From positions 124,001 to 188,000 of IMG/VR virus record IMGVR_UViG_3300030041_000009: a DNA stretch of 64,000 nucleotides, one strand, 5' to 3'. A model generated the notes under the pieces. The model saw only the letters and a list, made by a program, of their open reading frames with translations. It did no database searches and was not told the DNA's origin. The position numbers and the translations under genes were made by a program. Each line of letters begins with the position of its first letter. Position 1 is the first letter of the stretch. Below are positions 18,971 to 52,185 of the stretch, one piece after another.

Positions 18971-19303
18971 TTATAAATTAAATTTGTTTGATGCTAATAT
19001 AATTTCTGATTTAAAATCATTAGCTAAGCATTGATTTAAAATTATATTATGTTTTATGTCTTTAACGTCAATCCACCAATCCCCTTTATATTTTTCTGTT
19101 ACATATTGATGATCAATTATAAATGGATTTCCTTCATCATCAAAATTTTCCTCATATATTTTTAATACTAAATATTTTTTACCTTCTTTTGGTTCAGTAC
19201 TATTATAATTTTTCCTTTTTTCACCGTGAATGCATATTACTTCATCACCTACTGAAAAATATATATCGTCATTTTCTTCAAATATTTTAAAATTTGTTAT
19301 CAT
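18971..19303 (-). CDS. Dual-tag family protein (MITNFKIFE ... NKFNL)
   Basis: Terminal motifs. Confidence 0.75.
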   Translation of the reverse strand: MITNFKIFEENDDIYFSVGDEVICIHGEKRKNYNSTEPKEGKKYLVLKIYEENFDDEGNPFIIDHQYVTEKYKGDWWIDVKDIKHNIILNQCLANDFKSEIILASNKFNL

Positions 19304-19791
19304 ATGTTAAATTTGTTTGCTGATTTATTTAATTTAAATTCTTCAAATTCTTCTGGAGTTAATACACCAGATGTTTGGAATATTACAAATCCGTTATTTT
19401 TTAATTCTTCTGTGAAATTTTTAATAGCATAATCAGCATAATAAAAAATTTCTGAGTAATCTTCATTACCTTCGTCAGTTAATTCACCAGAATCATCAAT
19501 ATAATATCCTATTGTAATACAAGGAGCTTCCATCATAATACCAATATCAGAAATATTATAAATATATAATAATTCAGAGTTTGAAGATATATTTTCAAAA
19601 TAATCAAAAAAATCTGCTTCCTTTATATCAATATCTTCTTCAACTTTTTCTTTTCCTTCTTCAGTTAATGATATTTTAAGATTCCCATTTTCTAATCTTT
19701 CTAATGTTAAATAATTACCACTGCGTAACTCACGTGTATCATGAGATATCATAGTCTCATTTAGAGTAAATATATTAAATTTTGTTATCAT
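19300..19791 (-). CDS. Dual-tag family protein (probable start MITKFNIF ... NKFNI)
   Basis: Start reassigned to the ATG next to the upstream stop. Confidence 0.7.
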   Translation of the reverse strand: MITKFNIFTLNETMISHDTRELRSGNYLTLERLENGNLKISLTEEGKEKVEEDIDIKEADFFDYFENISSNSELLYIYNISDIGIMMEAPCITIGYYIDDSGELTDEGNEDYSEIFYYADYAIKNFTEELKNNGFVIFQTSGVLTPEEFEEFKLNKSANKFNI

Positions 19792-19792
19792 A

Positions 19793-20233
19793 TTATATGT
19801 TAAATTTATTTGTTGTTTTATATATTTCAATTCCTCCAACTTCATTAATACTATTTAATAATTCTGCTATATTTTCTGTGTCACCAACATATCCAGGATT
19901 AGAATTTTCATCTAAATTGTTAATTGGAAATCCTTCAATATATAATTCATCTTCTAATCCAGAACTTTCCATACTCCAAATTTTATATGTTTTCCCAAAT
20001 ATACTAACTATAGCATAAGCACCTTGATATAAATCGTGTCCTCTAATATCTTTTATTTTTAATATAGTATCATTATCTAAATTTGAAATTATATAATCTA
20101 ATCTTTCTTCTAAATACCTAATTAAACTTGCTTCTTCACTATCATCATCAGGATTATCTTTAACATAGTTCCAATTTACATCTCTACTCCATTCTCCTGT
20201 TTCGTATATTTTAAATGTTTTTAAATGTTTCAT
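19793..20233 (-). CDS. Dual-tag family protein (MKHLKTFKIYE ... NKFNI)
   Basis: Terminal motifs. Confidence 0.75.
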   Translation of the reverse strand: MKHLKTFKIYETGEWSRDVNWNYVKDNPDDDSEEASLIRYLEERLDYIISNLDNDTILKIKDIRGHDLYQGAYAIVSIFGKTYKIWSMESSGLEDELYIEGFPINNLDENSNPGYVGDTENIAELLNSINEVGGIEIYKTTNKFNI

Positions 20234-20286
20234 AAAAATATTTTTTATTTATATATAAAAAACTTGCACAATAAAAATATTTATAT

Positions 20287-20405
20287 TATCTTTGTATTTG
20301 ATTTTAATATCTATTTGTTGTGAAGCAAGAGATATTTAATTTTTAATTTTATTAGTTATATTGTTTTATAAAAAACTCTCTTGCTGTTTATCAGTAAGAG
20401 AGTTT
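20287..20405 (+). ncRNA. Putative small RNA unit 1 (promoter, UGUGAAGCA hairpin, U-rich tract, terminator)
   Basis: Architecture duplicated at 20493-20623 with compensatory stem changes. Confidence 0.55.
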
Positions 20406-20492
20406 AATAAAATTAAAATATTAAAAGACATCAATATATAATATTTTTATAAATAAAATCATTTTCCTATTGTAGGAATAAAATATTTTACT

Positions 20493-20623
20493 TATCTTTG
20501 GATTTCTTTTTACATCTACAATTTGCTGTGAAGCAAAAGATGTTTCTTTTTGTTAAATTTTGTTAGTTGTATTACTTAGTTTTTAGAAAGACTTCCTTAC
20601 TGATATATTCAGTAAGGAAGTTT
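20493..20623 (+). ncRNA. Putative small RNA unit 2
   Basis: TATCTTTG box, ACATCT..TGCTGTGAAGCA..AGATGT hairpin, CTTCCTTACTGA/TCAGTAAGGAAG stem. Confidence 0.55.
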
Positions 20624-20645
20624 AATAAATTAAAAAATTAAAAAT

Positions 20646-20849
20646 ATGAAAGAATTAATAGATGATACTCAGGTTCCAGATAGAGGATATTATTATTTAT
20701 TAGATTGGAATGAAGCCGATAGATGGGAAACTATGCTAAGATTATTTGATAAAAAAAGATTATGTGATTTGGAATTACATGAATATATTCAATTATTCGA
20801 AATTGCAACAAAAAAAGATTTAGAAAATTTAAAAATAGAAAAAACTTAA
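20646..20849 (+). CDS. Hypothetical protein
   Basis: ORF track. Confidence 0.6.
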   Translation: MKELIDDTQVPDRGYYYLLDWNEADRWETMLRLFDKKRLCDLELHEYIQLFEIATKKDLENLKIEKT

Positions 20850-20895
20850 TAAAATTATATTACTATATACATTACAAACAAAAATTAAAATTCTT

Positions 20896-20949
20896 ATGAA
20901 TAATAATATTTCAAACATGATTCAGCAACAACAACAAACTTACGTTTGA
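20896..20949 (+). CDS. Gln-rich leader peptide MNNNISNMIQQQQQTYV
   Basis: CAG CAA CAA CAA CAA run; stop codon overlaps antiterminator arm; precedes two tRNA-Gln genes. Confidence 0.75.
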   Translation: MNNNISNMIQQQQQTYV

Positions 20950-21033
20950 TTGGGTTAGAGTCATGTCTGTTTTTTACCCAATCCTGAAATGGTTTGGGTT
21001 TTTTTGTGCCCAACATTTTATGTTGGGTTTTTT
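20916..21033 (+). promoter_or_regulatory. Transcription attenuator with two tandem terminators
   Basis: Antiterminator GATTGGGT(20948-55)/ACCCAATC(20976-83); terminator 1 at 20976-21005; terminator 2 at 21008-21033. Confidence 0.75.
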
Positions 21034-21043
21034 GTTAATATAC

Positions 21044-21129
21044 TGCCTTGTGATGGAATTGGCTAAACATTTCAGTCTTTGAAACTGATGCTCATTGTGA
21101 GCTTGTGGGTTCGAACCCCACCAAGGCGA
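21044..21129 (+). tRNA. tRNA with TTG (Gln) anticodon on a class II long-variable-arm body
   Basis: Acceptor TGCCTTG/CAAGGCG, anticodon arm TCAGT-CTTTGAA-ACTGA, variable stem GCTCA/TGAGC, T-arm GTGGG-TTCGAAC-CCCAC; CCA not encoded. Confidence 0.85.
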
Positions 21130-21135
21130 CAATAT

Positions 21136-49013: not shown

Positions 49014-49349
49014 TTATAGTTCTTTTAATTTTAATAATTTGTATTTACGAAATCCATTTTTCCAAGTATCATAACTTAATTCAACTCCATTCAAATAATA
49101 TTTTTTATTAATAATTATTTCATTATCTTTTTTATATAATATAGATGGTCCGAAATCATTATGAAATGCATTATTTTTATAATATGATATTTCAATATTA
49201 TTATTTAATTCATGTATTATTTTCACATATTTATATTTTTGTATAAATTTAGTAATAAATTTAACATCATCTTTATCTATAGAATTAAATTTTAATGAAT
49301 GATATTCTATTTCATGCTCTATTACTATATCTGATTTGTGGTTATTCAT
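49014..49349 (-). CDS. Protein with HxxxGPS/YYLNG unit and RKxKL tag
   Basis: FHNDFGPSI..YYLNG; FRKYKLLKL. Confidence 0.65.
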   Translation of the reverse strand: MNNHKSDIVIEHEIEYHSLKFNSIDKDDVKFITKFIQKYKYVKIIHELNNNIEISYYKNNAFHNDFGPSILYKKDNEIIINKKYYLNGVELSYDTWKNGFRKYKLLKLKEL

Positions 49350-49633
49350 AAATTAAATTTATTTACATTTGAATCTAATTCATATTTTTCAATCTCATTA
49401 GTTGTTAATTTTCTTTCAATTTCATCATTCGATACCCAAATTGTTTTGTTATTAGGATCATTACATAAATAATAATAGCCATTAACAGTTGGATCTATTT
49501 TTATTATTTTTGTATATCTTGGAATATTATCAATAAAAATTATTGCTTTTAATTTAACATAATTTCCTATATTATATTTCTGTATATTATCTGACTTTTT
49601 CTCATTCATTTTAAATTTATTAATATGTTTCAT
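49346..49633 (-). CDS. Dual-tag family protein
   Basis: MKHINKF..NE ... NKFNL. Confidence 0.7.
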   Translation of the reverse strand: MKHINKFKMNEKKSDNIQKYNIGNYVKLKAIIFIDNIPRYTKIIKIDPTVNGYYYLCNDPNNKTIWVSNDEIERKLTTNEIEKYELDSNVNKFNL

Positions 49634-50172
49634 AAATTGAATTTATTTGCATTAGTCTTTAGTTTATCAATAGTAATAATATTCATACATATTGAATTTT
49701 CGTATTTTAACTCATCTATTCCGACTAATTCAGCAGAAACAAGAGCACTTTCATTAATATATTGAAAGTTTAATCCTTTTATTATACCATGATATTTTAT
49801 ATCAGTCATAAAATCAATTACTCCATCTGATATATATTTACCTATAATTTCTTCTCTTAGAAATTTTGAATAATGCTTATTAGGATTATAAATAGACATA
49901 TAAAAATCATGATATAATTTGTGAATGTTTATAATTATTTCATTATTAGTTTCTTTGAAATTTCTTTCTTTTGTTATTTTTTTAAAATTTTCATATTGTT
50001 CCTTCTCACTAACTTCACTACTAATATGATATACCTCATCATCATCTGGATCTATTGTACCATCTTCAAACCCTGGTACAATTTGAGGCTCGTCCTCTTC
50101 TGTTCTTGGTTCAAACATATCAGGATATTCTCCTCTTAAATCATAATTTTCAAATTTTTTCAAATATTTCAT
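49630..50172 (-). CDS. Dual-tag family protein
   Basis: MKYLKKFE ... NKFNL. Confidence 0.75.
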   Translation of the reverse strand: MKYLKKFENYDLRGEYPDMFEPRTEEDEPQIVPGFEDGTIDPDDDEVYHISSEVSEKEQYENFKKITKERNFKETNNEIIINIHKLYHDFYMSIYNPNKHYSKFLREEIIGKYISDGVIDFMTDIKYHGIIKGLNFQYINESALVSAELVGIDELKYENSICMNIITIDKLKTNANKFNL

Positions 50173-50206
50173 ACTAATATATATAAAAAAAAGTTAGTAA
50201 AAATTA

Positions 50207-50485
50207 CTAACTTTTTTCTAACTCAGATAGTTTTTCTAATTTTTTCTTTCTTTCTTCATTTAAAAAACAAAAATAGTCATAAAAATAATATTCATTATCA
50301 CCTATAAAATCATCAACATATGTCATAGATTTATTTAATCTAAATCTAAATACCAAATGTTCATTATCTTCAATTGATATAAAATCATCTTTATCAAATA
50401 CTGAATAAATGTTATTAATAATATAATATTTATTTTTTTCAAATTGATAAAAATTATTTTTACAATGAGCTTTCATTAATTTCAT
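50207..50485 (-). CDS. Relative of the 130-1631 family with RKxKL tag
   Basis: CKNNF..KNKYY..FYDYF..ERKKKLEKL. Confidence 0.65.
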   Translation of the reverse strand: MKLMKAHCKNNFYQFEKNKYYIINNIYSVFDKDDFISIEDNEHLVFRFRLNKSMTYVDDFIGDNEYYFYDYFCFLNEERKKKLEKLSELEKS

Positions 50486-50723
50486 TTATTTTTTCCTTTC
50501 TTAAAAAATTATTTATTCCATAAATTTTATTAATATCTTTTACTGTTAAGCATTTTAATTCTGATTTTTCTTCATCACCCCATTCTTCTACACAAATATA
50601 ATATTTTTCCCAACTAGATTTGAAAATATAAAGTACTAAACTATTATATTTATCAATATACTTATGTAGATTTGATGAATTATCAACCTCATTAAAATTA
50701 TATTTTAAAAATTTTTGACTCAT
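50460..50723 (-). CDS. Hypothetical protein with RKxKI tag
   Basis: LRKEKINEI. Confidence 0.6.
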   Translation of the reverse strand: MSQKFLKYNFNEVDNSSNLHKYIDKYNSLVLYIFKSSWEKYYICVEEWGDEEKSELKCLTVKDINKIYGINNFLRKEKINEINESSL

Positions 50724-51196
50724 TTTTTCTTTTTTTCGTGCCTTTTTGACTTAGATTGATTAAAAATTATGCCATTAATACTAGGTTTTGATTTACTAAA
50801 ATCTAAACTATTTACTGATGTTTTAAAATCTTTTTTTATGTTTTCATTTTTTTCAATTTCAGAACTTTTAATTACTTGTTTAATATTACTAATAAATTCA
50901 AGTTGATTTTCACTTGGTTCAGTACATCCGTCATCAAACATTATATAATTACTATCAACACTTATATATTTTAAATATTCAATCATATCAAATATATATT
51001 TAGATGTTTCACCAAATATTAAATCATTATATTCTGTTATATTCCAAGATTTTGGTTCATAATTTTTAAATTTATCAATATCATCTTCATTTGTTATAAA
51101 TATATTTATCCAATCAACATAATTAATAATCATATCTTTTTGTCTCTTACTTAACGCTTTTTTTGAAACTACAAAACTACTTGGTTCAATTTTCAT
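50720..51196 (-). CDS. Diverged paralog of 51202..51600
   Basis: SSFVV..QKxMI..WxIxxYNDxIFGETS. Confidence 0.65.
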   Translation of the reverse strand: MKIEPSSFVVSKKALSKRQKDMIINYVDWINIFITNEDDIDKFKNYEPKSWNITEYNDLIFGETSKYIFDMIEYLKYISVDSNYIMFDDGCTEPSENQLEFISNIKQVIKSSEIEKNENIKKDFKTSVNSLDFSKSKPSINGIIFNQSKSKRHEKKKK

Positions 51197-51201
51197 CTAT
51201 T

Positions 51202-51600
51202 TTAATATTTTTTATATTTTAATTTAATAAGTTTTTTTTTACGAAACTTTTTTTTTGACTCAGTTATAAAATCTAATTGACTTTGATATGGCTCGTCATT
51301 ATATCCTTCGTTCCAATTAATTGAATCTGGATCAACTTTTATATAATCTAAAAAATCTTGCATACTAAAATTATCCATTGAAGTTTCACCAAATATAAAA
51401 TCATTATAATCAACTATTCTCCATGGATCAGTATCACAATATTCGAATTTATCTATACATATTTCATCAATAGTTTTAAAAAACTCAACATAACTTTGAT
51501 AATCATAAATCATTTCTTTTTGTTTATTAGTTAAAGAATCTTTAATTACTACAAAACTGCTTGATGATGAGTTACTTACAAATCCATTTCGTATTTTCAT
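51202..51600 (-). CDS. MKIRxGFVSNSSSSSF family protein
   Basis: Characteristic N-terminal motif; RKKKL tag. Confidence 0.75.
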   Translation of the reverse strand: MKIRNGFVSNSSSSSFVVIKDSLTNKQKEMIYDYQSYVEFFKTIDEICIDKFEYCDTDPWRIVDYNDFIFGETSMDNFSMQDFLDYIKVDPDSINWNEGYNDEPYQSQLDFITESKKKFRKKKLIKLKYKKY

Positions 51601-51609
51601 TTGATTTTA

Positions 51610-52185
51610 TTATTTTTTAAACATTATTTCTTCTACCATTTCACATATGATATGTCCAATCATAATATGAGATTCTTGTATTCTTGGTGTATTATCAGAT
51701 GGAACATTAATTGTGTAATTACTTATTCCTTTGAGTTTTCCACCATCTTTACCTGTTAATGCAATAGTTATCATTCCTAATTTATTAGCTTCATAACAAG
51801 CATTAAAAACATTATTAGAGTTACCTGAGGTTGAGATTGCAATTAGAATATCATTTTTTCTACCCATTCCTTTTATTAATCTTGAATATATATTATCAAA
51901 GGAATAATCGTTTGCAACAGCAGTCAAATATGATGTATTTACATGTAATGCTTCAGCAAATAATGGATCTCTATCTATATAAAATCTACCTGATAATTCT
52001 GCAGCAATGTGCTGAGCATCAGCAGCACTTCCACCATTTCCACATAAAAGAACTTTACCGTCATTTTTAAAGCACTTAATCATCAAATTAGTAATATCTT
52101 CTATTGTTTTAATTAAAGTATCATCAGAATAAATTAATTCTTTTACATTTATTGATTCTCTTATTATATTTTTAATTCTTTTCAT
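51610..52185 (-). CDS. gmhA: D-sedoheptulose-7-phosphate isomerase
   Basis: CGNGGSAADAQHIAAEL, TAVANDY, ISTSGNS, TPRIQESH. Confidence 0.95.
   Translation of the reverse strand: MKRIKNIIRESINVKELIYSDDTLIKTIEDITNLMIKCFKNDGKVLLCGNGGSAADAQHIAAELSGRFYIDRDPLFAEALHVNTSYLTAVANDYSFDNIYSRLIKGMGRKNDILIAISTSGNSNNVFNACYEANKLGMITIALTGKDGGKLKGISNYTINVPSDNTPRIQESHIMIGHIICEMVEEIMFKK

What the first reader, a model, noticed from the sequence alone, without database searches (positions are those of the whole stretch)
20260..20630. Tandem pair of host-promoter-driven small RNA genes
Seen: two units, each with TTG..TATCTTTG, a hairpin capped by TG(T/C)TGTGAAGCA, a U-rich tract containing TTAGTT, and a closing stem with compensatory changes (CTCTCTTGCTG/CAGTAAGAGAG versus CTTCCTTACTG/CAGTAAGGAAG). 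No ORF is evident. Inference: phage sRNAs whose U-rich part could pair with A-rich Bacteroidota translation-initiation regions or sponge a host RNA-binding protein. They may mimic paralogous Bacteroidota sRNAs; this resemblance is recalled and unverified.
Basis: partly seen in the sequence, partly recalled or inferred. Interest (0 to 1): 0.6.

Follow-up and report, generated by a model that had tools for sequence, protein, structure and literature searches.

The report
Duplicated promoter and structured phage leader RNA
The two repeats are real copies of a conserved, folded RNA made from a Bacteroidota-type promoter in a huge peat/permafrost phage, but the RNA is most likely the untranslated leader of a small phage gene that has been duplicated, not a pair of free-standing regulatory RNA genes.

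Summary
Two homologous units (about 77-83% identical, 206-218 nt apart) lie on the + strand at 20264-20427 and 20470-20645. Each has an invariant TTG-N20-TATCTTTG promoter, a 5' hairpin (P1 plus P2, capped by GUGA), a U/A-rich linker, a long hairpin (P3) and an A-rich tail.

I found four more variants in related phage contigs. All six keep the three helices through compensatory changes: 94% of cells are paired against 41-53% in slid controls, and 10 pairs changed on both sides (0 of 500 shuffles reach this).

- Every relative carries a single unit. It sits between the promoter and the start codon of a conserved 67-aa gene, with no second promoter, so it is that gene's 5' leader.
- P3 is a poor terminator. 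Its U tail is short in most variants and absent in one.
- Rfam, GTDB genomes and GenBank phages gave no match. The architecture does not fit FopS.
- The U-rich tract pairs with phage start regions no better than shuffled versions of itself.
- Metatranscriptome contigs do not cover the units.

In this phage the promoter-plus-leader module is duplicated, and the upstream copy has no ORF. Both copies have stayed under structural selection since the duplication. This is a new RNA motif of a known kind, of moderate interest.

The parts
20264..20294 (+). Promoter of unit 1: -33 TTG (20264-20266), 20-nt spacer, -7 box TATCTTTG (20287-20294)
   Evidence: Both elements and the spacing are invariant in all six variants. 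The motif class TTG-N17-21-TAnnTTTG has 28 of its 58 genome hits in the 12% intergenic DNA, mostly 11-70 nt before an ATG.
20306..20336 (+). Unit 1 5' hairpin: P1 (20306-20311 with 20331-20336) and P2 (20315-20319 with 20324-20328), with GUGA tetraloop at 20320-20323
   Evidence: Fold. Covariation. The loop and four of the five P2 pairs are invariant in six variants.
20337..20373 (+). Unit 1 U/A-rich linker. Its core (UAAUUU, one or two bases, AAUUU) is conserved, clearly in four variants and more loosely in U2 and V75. The TTAGTT stretch is specific to this phage.
   Evidence: Alignments. A 14-nt stretch is perfectly complementary to the tail (20341-20354 with 20405-20418).
20374..20404 (+). 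Unit 1 long hairpin P3 (13 bp, loop 20387-20391)
   Evidence: Not flagged as a terminator. Discriminant -11.5.
20405..20427 (+). Unit 1 A-rich tail, homologous to the start region of the 67-aa gene but followed by no ORF
   Evidence: Homology to the unit 2 tail ends at the position of the ATG. The covariance-model match covers 20298-20427.
20470..20500 (+). Promoter of unit 2: TTG (20470-20472), 20-nt spacer, TATCTTTG (20493-20500)
20511..20544 (+). Unit 2 5' hairpin: P1 (20511-20516 with 20539-20544) and P2 (20523-20527 with 20532-20536), with GUGA at 20528-20531
20545..20589 (+). Unit 2 U-rich linker
20590..20622 (+). Unit 2 long hairpin P3 (14 bp, loop 20604-20608)
   Evidence: Two pairs differ on both sides from unit 1 and from all relatives. 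Discriminant -9.1.
20623..20645 (+). [quoted passage not shown]
   Evidence: It runs directly into the ATG at 20646. Mean predicted unpaired probability over -25..-1 is 0.43.
20646..20849 (+). Conserved 67-aa gene served by the leader. Function unknown.
   Evidence: ORF. Homologs at 40-90% identity in phage contigs. AF2 pLDDT 95, a beta-hairpin plus three helices. No Pfam, PHROG or significant PDB match.

Best explanation
Each unit is a promoter-plus-leader module, not an independent sRNA gene.

A host-type (Bacteroidota sigma-ABfr class) promoter starts an RNA with four parts:
- a conserved hairpin (P1-P2, GUGA loop) within the first 40-45 nt;
- a conserved U/A-rich linker;
- a long hairpin, P3;
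- an A-rich tail that is the ribosome landing region of a conserved 67-aa gene.

The RNA therefore acts in cis as the 5' leader of that gene. It probably serves the whole short + strand block that ends after the two tRNA-Gln genes.

My preferred mechanism is as follows. P3 acts as a clamp that holds the U-rich linker next to the A-rich start region, so the linker can mask it. The sequence-invariant P1-P2 hairpin is the docking site for a phage or host factor that shifts this balance. P3 may also stop a minority of polymerases, giving some short RNA.

In this phage the module, from upstream of the -33 element to just before the ATG, was duplicated in tandem. The upstream copy adds a second promoter and a second leader copy in the same transcript.

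Shown: the promoter conservation, the three helices, the strand, the position relative to the gene, and selection on both copies.
Inferred: the start site, the masking of the start region, factor binding, and the fate of unit 1 transcripts.

The confidence given is for the cis-leader reading. The specific clamp-and-mask mechanism deserves about 0.25.
For: - Six variants keep P1, P2 and P3. 94% of cells are paired against 41-53% when partners are slid. 10 pairs changed on both sides against 4.0 +/- 1.4 in shuffles, 0 of 500. In my own table 129 of 131 cells are paired.
- Relatives at 65-90% protein identity carry one unit only, always between the promoter and the ATG of the 67-aa gene.
- More distant homologs of the gene have the same class of promoter only 28 nt before the ATG, or sit inside operons, and lack the unit.
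- Other intergenic promoters of this class in the genome that face a nearby gene lie 11-70 nt before its ATG. Unit 2's lies 145 nt before.
- P3 is a weak terminator at best. One variant lacks a U tract and another has a 44-nt loop insert.
- Folding predicts linker-tail pairing in several variants.
- Unit 1 and unit 2 differ at 9 of 44 paired positions, yet only one pair is broken. Random placement of those differences breaks 6.6 on average, P about 5e-4.
Against: - No transcript ends are known. The two metatranscriptome runs gave only low-depth contigs on flanking genes and none on the units, so neither read-through nor termination is shown.
- Unit 1 has no ORF behind it yet keeps its structure. 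That fits a trans-acting RNA as well as a second leader copy.
- The linker-tail pairing is A-U only and both partners are conserved, so covariation cannot test it.
- Predicted accessibility of the start region is intermediate (0.43-0.52).
- A phage-specific promoter hidden inside or after P3 cannot be excluded.
- There are only six variants, from one narrow clade.
Confidence: 0.55

Rival explanations
1. Two stand-alone, trans-acting phage sRNA genes. Each promoter makes a 115-135-nt RNA that ends at P3. The conserved U/A-rich linker or the hairpin then pairs with host or phage mRNAs, or titrates a host RNA-binding protein.
For: - Unit 1 has a promoter, a conserved structure and no ORF, and has stayed under structural selection since the duplication.
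- Five of six variants have 3-4 or more U after P3.
- The same genome drives other non-coding units from this promoter class next to a GOLLD RNA.
- Bacteroides annotation recognises a class of 5' UTR-derived sRNAs (PMC10994844).
Against: - In all relatives the unit is the only route from a promoter to the 67-aa gene.
- P3 scores below three neighbouring terminators. One variant has no U tract.
- No RNA contigs cover the units although the flanking genes are covered (weak evidence).
- Linker-to-start-region pairing is no better than for shuffled linkers.
- No host or Rfam counterpart was found.
Confidence: 0.2
2. A transcription switch of the nut/put or attenuator kind. P3 is a regulated stop. 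The promoter-proximal P1-P2 hairpin, with its GNRA-type loop, recruits a phage or host factor to the polymerase. Early transcripts then end at P3, and later ones read through into the 67-aa gene and the tRNA-Gln genes.
For: - The hairpin lies within about 10 nt of the promoter's -7 box, and its loop and P2 stem are sequence-invariant.
- A hairpin with a short U run follows in five of six variants.
- Downstream there are further terminator-like sites before the tRNAs.
Against: - The U tract is absent in V75.
- V90 has a 44-nt loop insert, which is unfavourable for a terminator.
- Terminator scores are negative throughout.
- There is no conserved alternative (antiterminator) pairing. One possible pairing, seen by eye in unit 1 only, is not kept in the others.
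- No N-like or other factor was identified.
Confidence: 0.15
3. A passive element. The hairpins only stabilise the mRNA or insulate the divergent promoters, and the duplication simply doubles promoter strength, with no regulatory input.
For: - Tandem promoters are a common way to raise output.
- Strong hairpins in leaders often protect mRNAs (general knowledge).
- No ligand or partner was found.
Against: - P2 and its loop are far more conserved in sequence than the rest of the unit: 13 of 14 positions are invariant across six variants whose overall identity is about 70-77%. Pure stability does not need this.
- The linker core is also conserved.
Confidence: 0.1

Closest known systems
Structured 5' leaders and translational operators of phage and bacterial mRNAs (general class), including 5' UTR-derived sRNAs as annotated in Bacteroides (PMC10994844)
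   Same: It sits between promoter and start codon. It has conserved helices with covariation and an element adjacent to the ribosome landing region. A short by-product RNA is possible.
   Different: There is no match to any Rfam family. The ligand or partner is unknown. The module is duplicated together with its promoter, leaving one copy without an ORF.
FopS/GibS paralogous sRNAs of Bacteroides thetaiotaomicron (PMC11697453)
   Same: Canonical sigma-ABfr-type promoter, multicopy, a hairpin near the 3' end, and possible action at A-rich start regions.
   Different: FopS RNAs are 65-70 nt, with a single-stranded 5' seed directly followed by a terminator. This RNA starts with a conserved hairpin, is about twice as long, has a weak or absent U tail, shows no similarity by Rfam, and in relatives is the leader of a gene.
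Lambda nut (boxB) and HK022 put antitermination RNAs (from general knowledge, not tested here)
   Same: A promoter-proximal hairpin with a GNRA-type loop in a phage early transcript, followed by a stop-like hairpin. The two copies in one phage recall nutL/nutR and putL/putR.
   Different: No boxA-like element or N-like protein was identified. The hairpin sequence is unrelated. P3 is a weak terminator. The host phylum is different.
Intrinsic (Rho-independent) terminators
   Same: P3 is a stable 10-14-bp hairpin, flanked by an A run on the 5' side and in most variants by U on the 3' side.
   Different: The U tail is only 3-4 nt in four variants and absent in one. The loop is 44 nt in another. 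The discriminant is negative where neighbouring terminators are positive.

Membership tests
FopS/GibS sRNA family | Sequence and structure similarity to the family model (the authors state the consensus was deposited in Rfam) | tested here: not met
   The Rfam 15 gathering and E<=10 scans of 20200-20700 list only chance matches: Lacto-rpoB at 28.6 bits against a 40-bit cut-off, and microRNA models. I could not verify that release 15 holds the FopS model.
FopS/GibS sRNA family | Architecture: RNA of about 65-70 nt with a single-stranded 5' seed followed directly by a terminator hairpin | tested here: not met
   This RNA starts with a conserved P1-P2 hairpin, and 24-45 nt of linker separate it from P3. 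The total is about 125-145 nt. FopS description from PMC11697453.
FopS/GibS sRNA family | Canonical sigma-ABfr promoter | tested here: met
   TTG-N20-TATCTTTG is invariant in six variants. The motif class is enriched in intergenic DNA. The consensus itself is from general knowledge.
FopS/GibS sRNA family | Binding by RbpB and repression of SusC-type mRNAs | not testable with these tools
   The host is unknown and no binding assay is available.
Intrinsic terminator (needed for a discrete sRNA 3' end) | Stable G+C-containing hairpin | tested here: met
   P3 has dG -15 to -19 kcal/mol in all variants.
Intrinsic terminator (needed for a discrete sRNA 3' end) | U-rich tract directly after the stem | tested here: not met
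   Neither unit is flagged by the scan that requires 5 T in 8, although three nearby sites are. Tails are UUUA or UUUU in four variants, none in V75 and U-rich only in V90. Discriminant -5 to -45 against +7 to +16 (formula recalled from memory, so only the ranking should be trusted).
Leader-peptide attenuator | Conserved short ORF with regulatory codons inside the leader | tested here: not met
   The only recurrent frame starts at the GUG of the loop. Its residues change with stem substitutions, and its length is 8, 8, 8, 9, 12 and 27 codons across the variants (sequences).
Riboswitch / T-box type leader | Match to a known aptamer family, and mutually exclusive terminator and antiterminator helices | tested here: not met
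   No Rfam match. By eye, a 9-nt stretch of the hairpin's 3' strand could pair with the P3 5' arm in unit 1 only. It is not kept in unit 2 or the relatives (sequences).
nut/put-like processive antitermination site | Promoter-proximal conserved hairpin in an early transcript, upstream of terminators | tested here: inconclusive
   Position and hairpin conservation are met. P3 is a weak stop. No linear boxA-like element could be defined.
nut/put-like processive antitermination site | Cognate antiterminator protein, or direct action on RNA polymerase | not tested
   No candidate protein was identified. The neighbouring proteins have no family hits.

The most novel reading that the evidence does not exclude
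Unit 1 is a young, orphan sRNA born by duplication of a gene's promoter and 5' leader. It keeps the leader's conserved hairpin and linker so that it can act in trans as a decoy for the same factor that controls the leader of the 67-aa gene and tRNA-Gln block. That factor could be a phage regulator or a host RNA-binding protein. This would give the phage a dosage-tunable RNA sponge in a Bacteroidota host.
Probability: 0.15. Interest if true: 0.6.

Novelty: new member of a known kind. Interest (0 to 1): 0.35.

Why it matters
Very little is known about RNA-level control in phages of Bacteroidota. In this phylum translation starts without Shine-Dalgarno pairing and depends on open A-rich leaders.

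A conserved, covarying leader that places a U-rich strand beside such an A-rich start region is a concrete object for testing how these phages gate early genes. It comes in single and duplicated forms in closely related huge phages.

The pair also shows a possible route by which a leader copy could become a free RNA gene.

The motif is absent from Rfam and could be added as a small new family. On present evidence it is confined to one clade of peat/permafrost phages and has no demonstrated function, so its general importance is modest.

Tried and rejected
- **Rfam.** The whole window at gathering thresholds and the locus at E<=10 gave only two tRNAs and chance hits.
- **More copies or relatives.** DNA patterns in IMG/VR found only the same clade plus chance coding hits. 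The metagenome scan found the same three lineages. The GTDB genome scan gave one chance hit in an archaeal MAG. GenBank phages gave nothing by DNA or by the 67-aa protein. The covariance model R1 found nothing in the rest of the own record or in four more distant phage records.
- **Host genomes.** A model search of Bacteroidota genomes could not be run.
- **Coding potential.** Rejected.
- **DNA-level operator or palindrome.** Rejected. G-U wobbles occur in all helices, and the upper half of P3 is replaced wholesale while pairing is kept.
- **Specific targeting of phage start regions by the linker.** Best duplex energies are -15.8 and -23.0 kcal/mol, against shuffled-linker minima of -18.3 and -23.05.
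- **Conserved antiterminator pairing.** A possible pairing was seen by eye in unit 1 only; no computation was run on it.
- **ORF remnant after unit 1.** Homology stops where the ATG would be.
- **Expression.** Two permafrost metatranscriptome runs, held as contigs, cover the neighbouring genes at depth 2-5 but not 20083-20628. This is inconclusive, because contigs cannot show ends and small RNAs are often lost.
- **Function of the 67-aa protein.** Pfam, PHROG, PDB sequence search, AF2 and Foldseek gave no significant match. The best was the Red-beta C-terminal domain at E 1.7.
- **Replication origin.** Considered from GC skew and dropped, because the skew simply follows gene orientation.
- **CRISPR-repeat mimic (RNA anti-CRISPR).** Considered but not tested, because the host's repeats are unknown.

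Full report
**Setting.** The window is the reverse strand of positions 65980-129979 of a 214.5-kb IMG/VR virus record. G+C is about 21%. CheckV rates the record 30% complete, and a related 330-kb record 46% complete, so this is a very large phage. Runs that hold parts of it are labelled permafrost metagenome.

The finding lies in the 412-nt gap between a - strand 146-aa gene (19793-20233) and a + strand 67-aa gene (20646-20849).

**Observation.** There are two homologous units on the + strand (A1, 83% column identity; repeat families 206-218 nt apart). Each unit has:
- TTG, a 20-nt spacer and TATCTTTG;
- a two-tier hairpin, with P1 of 6 bp and P2 of 5 bp closed by GUGA;
- a U/A-rich linker of 37 or 45 nt;
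- a 13- or 14-bp hairpin, P3;
- an A-rich tail.

Exact coordinates were verified and are listed under parts. Both RNAs fold with z-scores of -5.2 and -5.9 against dinucleotide shuffles. No further copy exists in the record. Eight separately assembled contigs carry the identical tandem pair.

**Promoter.** The genome holds 58 matches to TTG-N17-21-TAnnTTTG, the Bacteroidota housekeeping promoter form as I know it from the literature. Of these, 28 lie in the 12% of DNA that is intergenic. Where they face a nearby gene they lie 11-70 nt before its ATG. Eight more drive a non-coding array beside a GOLLD RNA. The two boxes and their spacing are invariant in all six variants of the unit. 'Host-promoter-driven' is therefore reasonable, and the host is probably a member of Bacteroidota. 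This is an inference.

**Relatives.** Exact-pattern scans returned only the same phage. Neighbouring proteins led further.
- The 146-aa protein found lineages at 74% and 65% identity.
- The 67-aa protein found these plus more distant phages. Through the word search and contig look-ups it also found two more lineages, at 90% and 75% identity.
- This gives four extra variants: R74 (L056), R65 (L049), V90 (L072) and V75 (L067).
- Each has one unit only, placed between the same promoter and the ATG of the 67-aa gene. P3 ends 19-27 nt before the ATG, or 62 nt in R74.
- More distant homologs of the gene either have a promoter of the same class 28 nt before the ATG (L073) or sit inside operons. None has the unit.

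**Structure.** A covariance model built from four sequences (R1) scores the six variants at 121, 111, 107, 100, 55 and 54 bits.

| Measure | Observed | Control |
|---|---|---|
| Cells paired, model-guided alignment of six | 94% | 41-53% with partners slid |
| Pairs changed on both sides | 10 | 4.0 +/- 1.4 in shuffles; 0 of 500 reach it |
| Cells paired, four-sequence alignment | 94.8% | 42-51% with partners slid |
| Cells paired, my own helix table | 129 of 131 | 109 +/- 3 shuffled |
| Pairs with double changes, own table | 13 of 23 | not computed |

The own helix table also handles the 44-nt loop insert of V90. Wobble pairs occur in all three helices, which fixes the RNA strand as + and argues against a DNA palindrome. 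The GUGA loop and four of the five P2 pairs never vary. The linker keeps a core of UAAUUU, one or two bases, then AAUUU; the match is clear in four variants and looser in U2 and V75.

**Is it an sRNA gene?** Four results say not primarily.
1. In every relative the unit is the only link between a promoter and a conserved, expressed-looking gene, so it must be part of that mRNA.
2. P3 is a poor terminator.
   - The scan that flags three sites within 2 kb does not flag it.
   - The tails are UUUA or UUUU in four variants, nothing in V75, and U-rich only in V90, whose loop is 44 nt.
   - A hairpin-plus-T-tail discriminant gives -5 to -45 for P3 and +7 to +16 for the neighbouring sites. I recalled the formula from memory, so only the ranking matters.
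3. The proposed pairing of the U-rich tract with A-rich start regions is non-specific. Against all 5' regions of the phage's ORFs, the real linkers do no better than shuffled ones.
4. RNA-library contigs from two permafrost runs lie on the flanking genes, including 20699-20849, but not on the units. This is weak evidence, since contigs cannot show ends and small RNAs are easily lost.

**Unit 1.** The duplicated segment runs from upstream of the -33 element to just before the ATG. Similarity stops where the ORF would start. Units 1 and 2 share a two-pair-longer P3 and the TTAGTT insert. On that basis I infer that the duplication happened within this lineage.

The copies differ at 9 of 44 paired positions, yet only one pair is broken, in unit 2. 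Random placement of those differences breaks 6.6 pairs on average, and P(one or fewer) is about 5e-4. Both copies, including the ORF-less one, have therefore been kept folded.

This is the best argument for some RNA-level role of unit 1 beyond carrying a promoter. It keeps the trans-acting reading alive at about 0.2.

**Mechanism.** Folding of leader plus start region predicts that the linker pairs with the A-rich tail around P3 in unit 1, in unit 2 and partly in R74. It includes a perfect 14-nt match in unit 1.

As I recall from the literature, Bacteroidota ribosomes rely on open A-rich leaders rather than Shine-Dalgarno pairing. I therefore favour a clamp-and-mask model: P3 holds an anti-start-region strand in place, and the invariant P1-P2 hairpin is a docking site for a factor. 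All of this is inference.

An antitermination switch and a passive stabiliser are the alternatives. No conserved antiterminator helix, leader peptide or known aptamer is present.

**Comparison with the known.** Rfam has no family for this RNA. FopS/GibS differ in length and architecture. The hairpin pattern is absent from 185,579 species genomes except for one chance archaeal hit. A model search of Bacteroidota genomes could not be run.

The 67-aa protein folds confidently (pLDDT 95) into a beta-hairpin plus three helices, but matches nothing significant.

**Verdict.** This is a genuine, conserved, covarying RNA element and a new motif of a known kind (a structured phage 5' leader), tandemly duplicated in this phage. 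The stand-alone sRNA and host-mimic readings are not supported but not excluded for unit 1. Several side observations in the same block look at least as interesting; they are listed separately, above all the glutamine-codon leader ORF in front of the tRNA-Gln genes.

Noticed in passing
window 20896-21043 (+): A 17-codon ORF (20896-20949) contains five consecutive glutamine codons. Four or five segments follow that can pair alternately (UUGGGU / ACCCAA type), forming two terminator-like hairpins with U6-U7 tails. These sit directly before two tRNA-Gln genes. The ORF and hairpins are conserved in R74 and R65, and four of the five ORF substitutions are synonymous third-position changes (one is Ser to Leu). 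Constrained folds: with a ribosome at the stop codon the first terminator forms, and with a ribosome stalled on the Gln run an antiterminator replaces it. The second terminator persists in both. This looks like a leader-peptide attenuator that controls phage tRNA genes according to Gln-tRNA supply. One full-text search listed no paper on such a case.
   Followed up: partly
window 21044-21130 (+): The first 'tRNA-Gln' (anticodon UUG, 87 nt) has a long variable arm with a 4-bp stem, and A at the discriminator position. This is the shape of class II tRNAs (Leu/Ser/Tyr type), not of normal tRNA-Gln. It is conserved in R74 and R65. Which amino acid it carries is open.
   Followed up: partly
window 20859-20877 (+), and upstream of other genes (e.g. 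16324; before the - strand gene start at 20233): A 19-nt stretch (ATTACTATATACATTACAA) is invariant in three lineages between the 67-aa gene and the Gln leader ORF. Similar TATATA-containing stretches lie 20-30 nt before several ATGs. This may be a second, phage-specific promoter class.
   Followed up: partly
window 18971-20233 (-), and elsewhere in the record: A paralogous gene family whose products end in NKFN(I/L). Relatives carry one more copy beside the unit. At other family sites in the record the upstream sequence suggests that the stop overlaps the next start (ATATGA), an inference.
   Followed up: no
G000:C1:52514-52935 (+), outside the window (L059:4015-4436): GOLLD RNA, Rfam RF02032, 278.9 bits, E 2e-79.
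   Followed up: yes
G000:C1 about 49150-52000 (+), outside the window (L059): About 3 kb without ORFs of 60 aa or more, holding several copies (seven at intergenic sites in the promoter scan, plus near-copies seen by eye) of one Bacteroidota-type promoter. Each is followed by a short non-coding unit, including a repeat of about 65 nt seen by eye five or six times. It lies just upstream of the GOLLD RNA, and aragorn finds no tRNA there.
   Followed up: partly
G000:C1:4949-5020 (+), outside the window: A tRNA with anticodon CUA (amber-suppressor type; aragorn labels it Pyl). It hints at TAG reassignment in part of the genome. ORFs in the studied region read normally under table 11.
   Followed up: no
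L075-L078 (distant homologs of the 67-aa gene): In more distant phages the homolog sits in a block after a sigma-70-family gene and a small HTH gene. This suggests an early regulatory neighbourhood.
   Followed up: no
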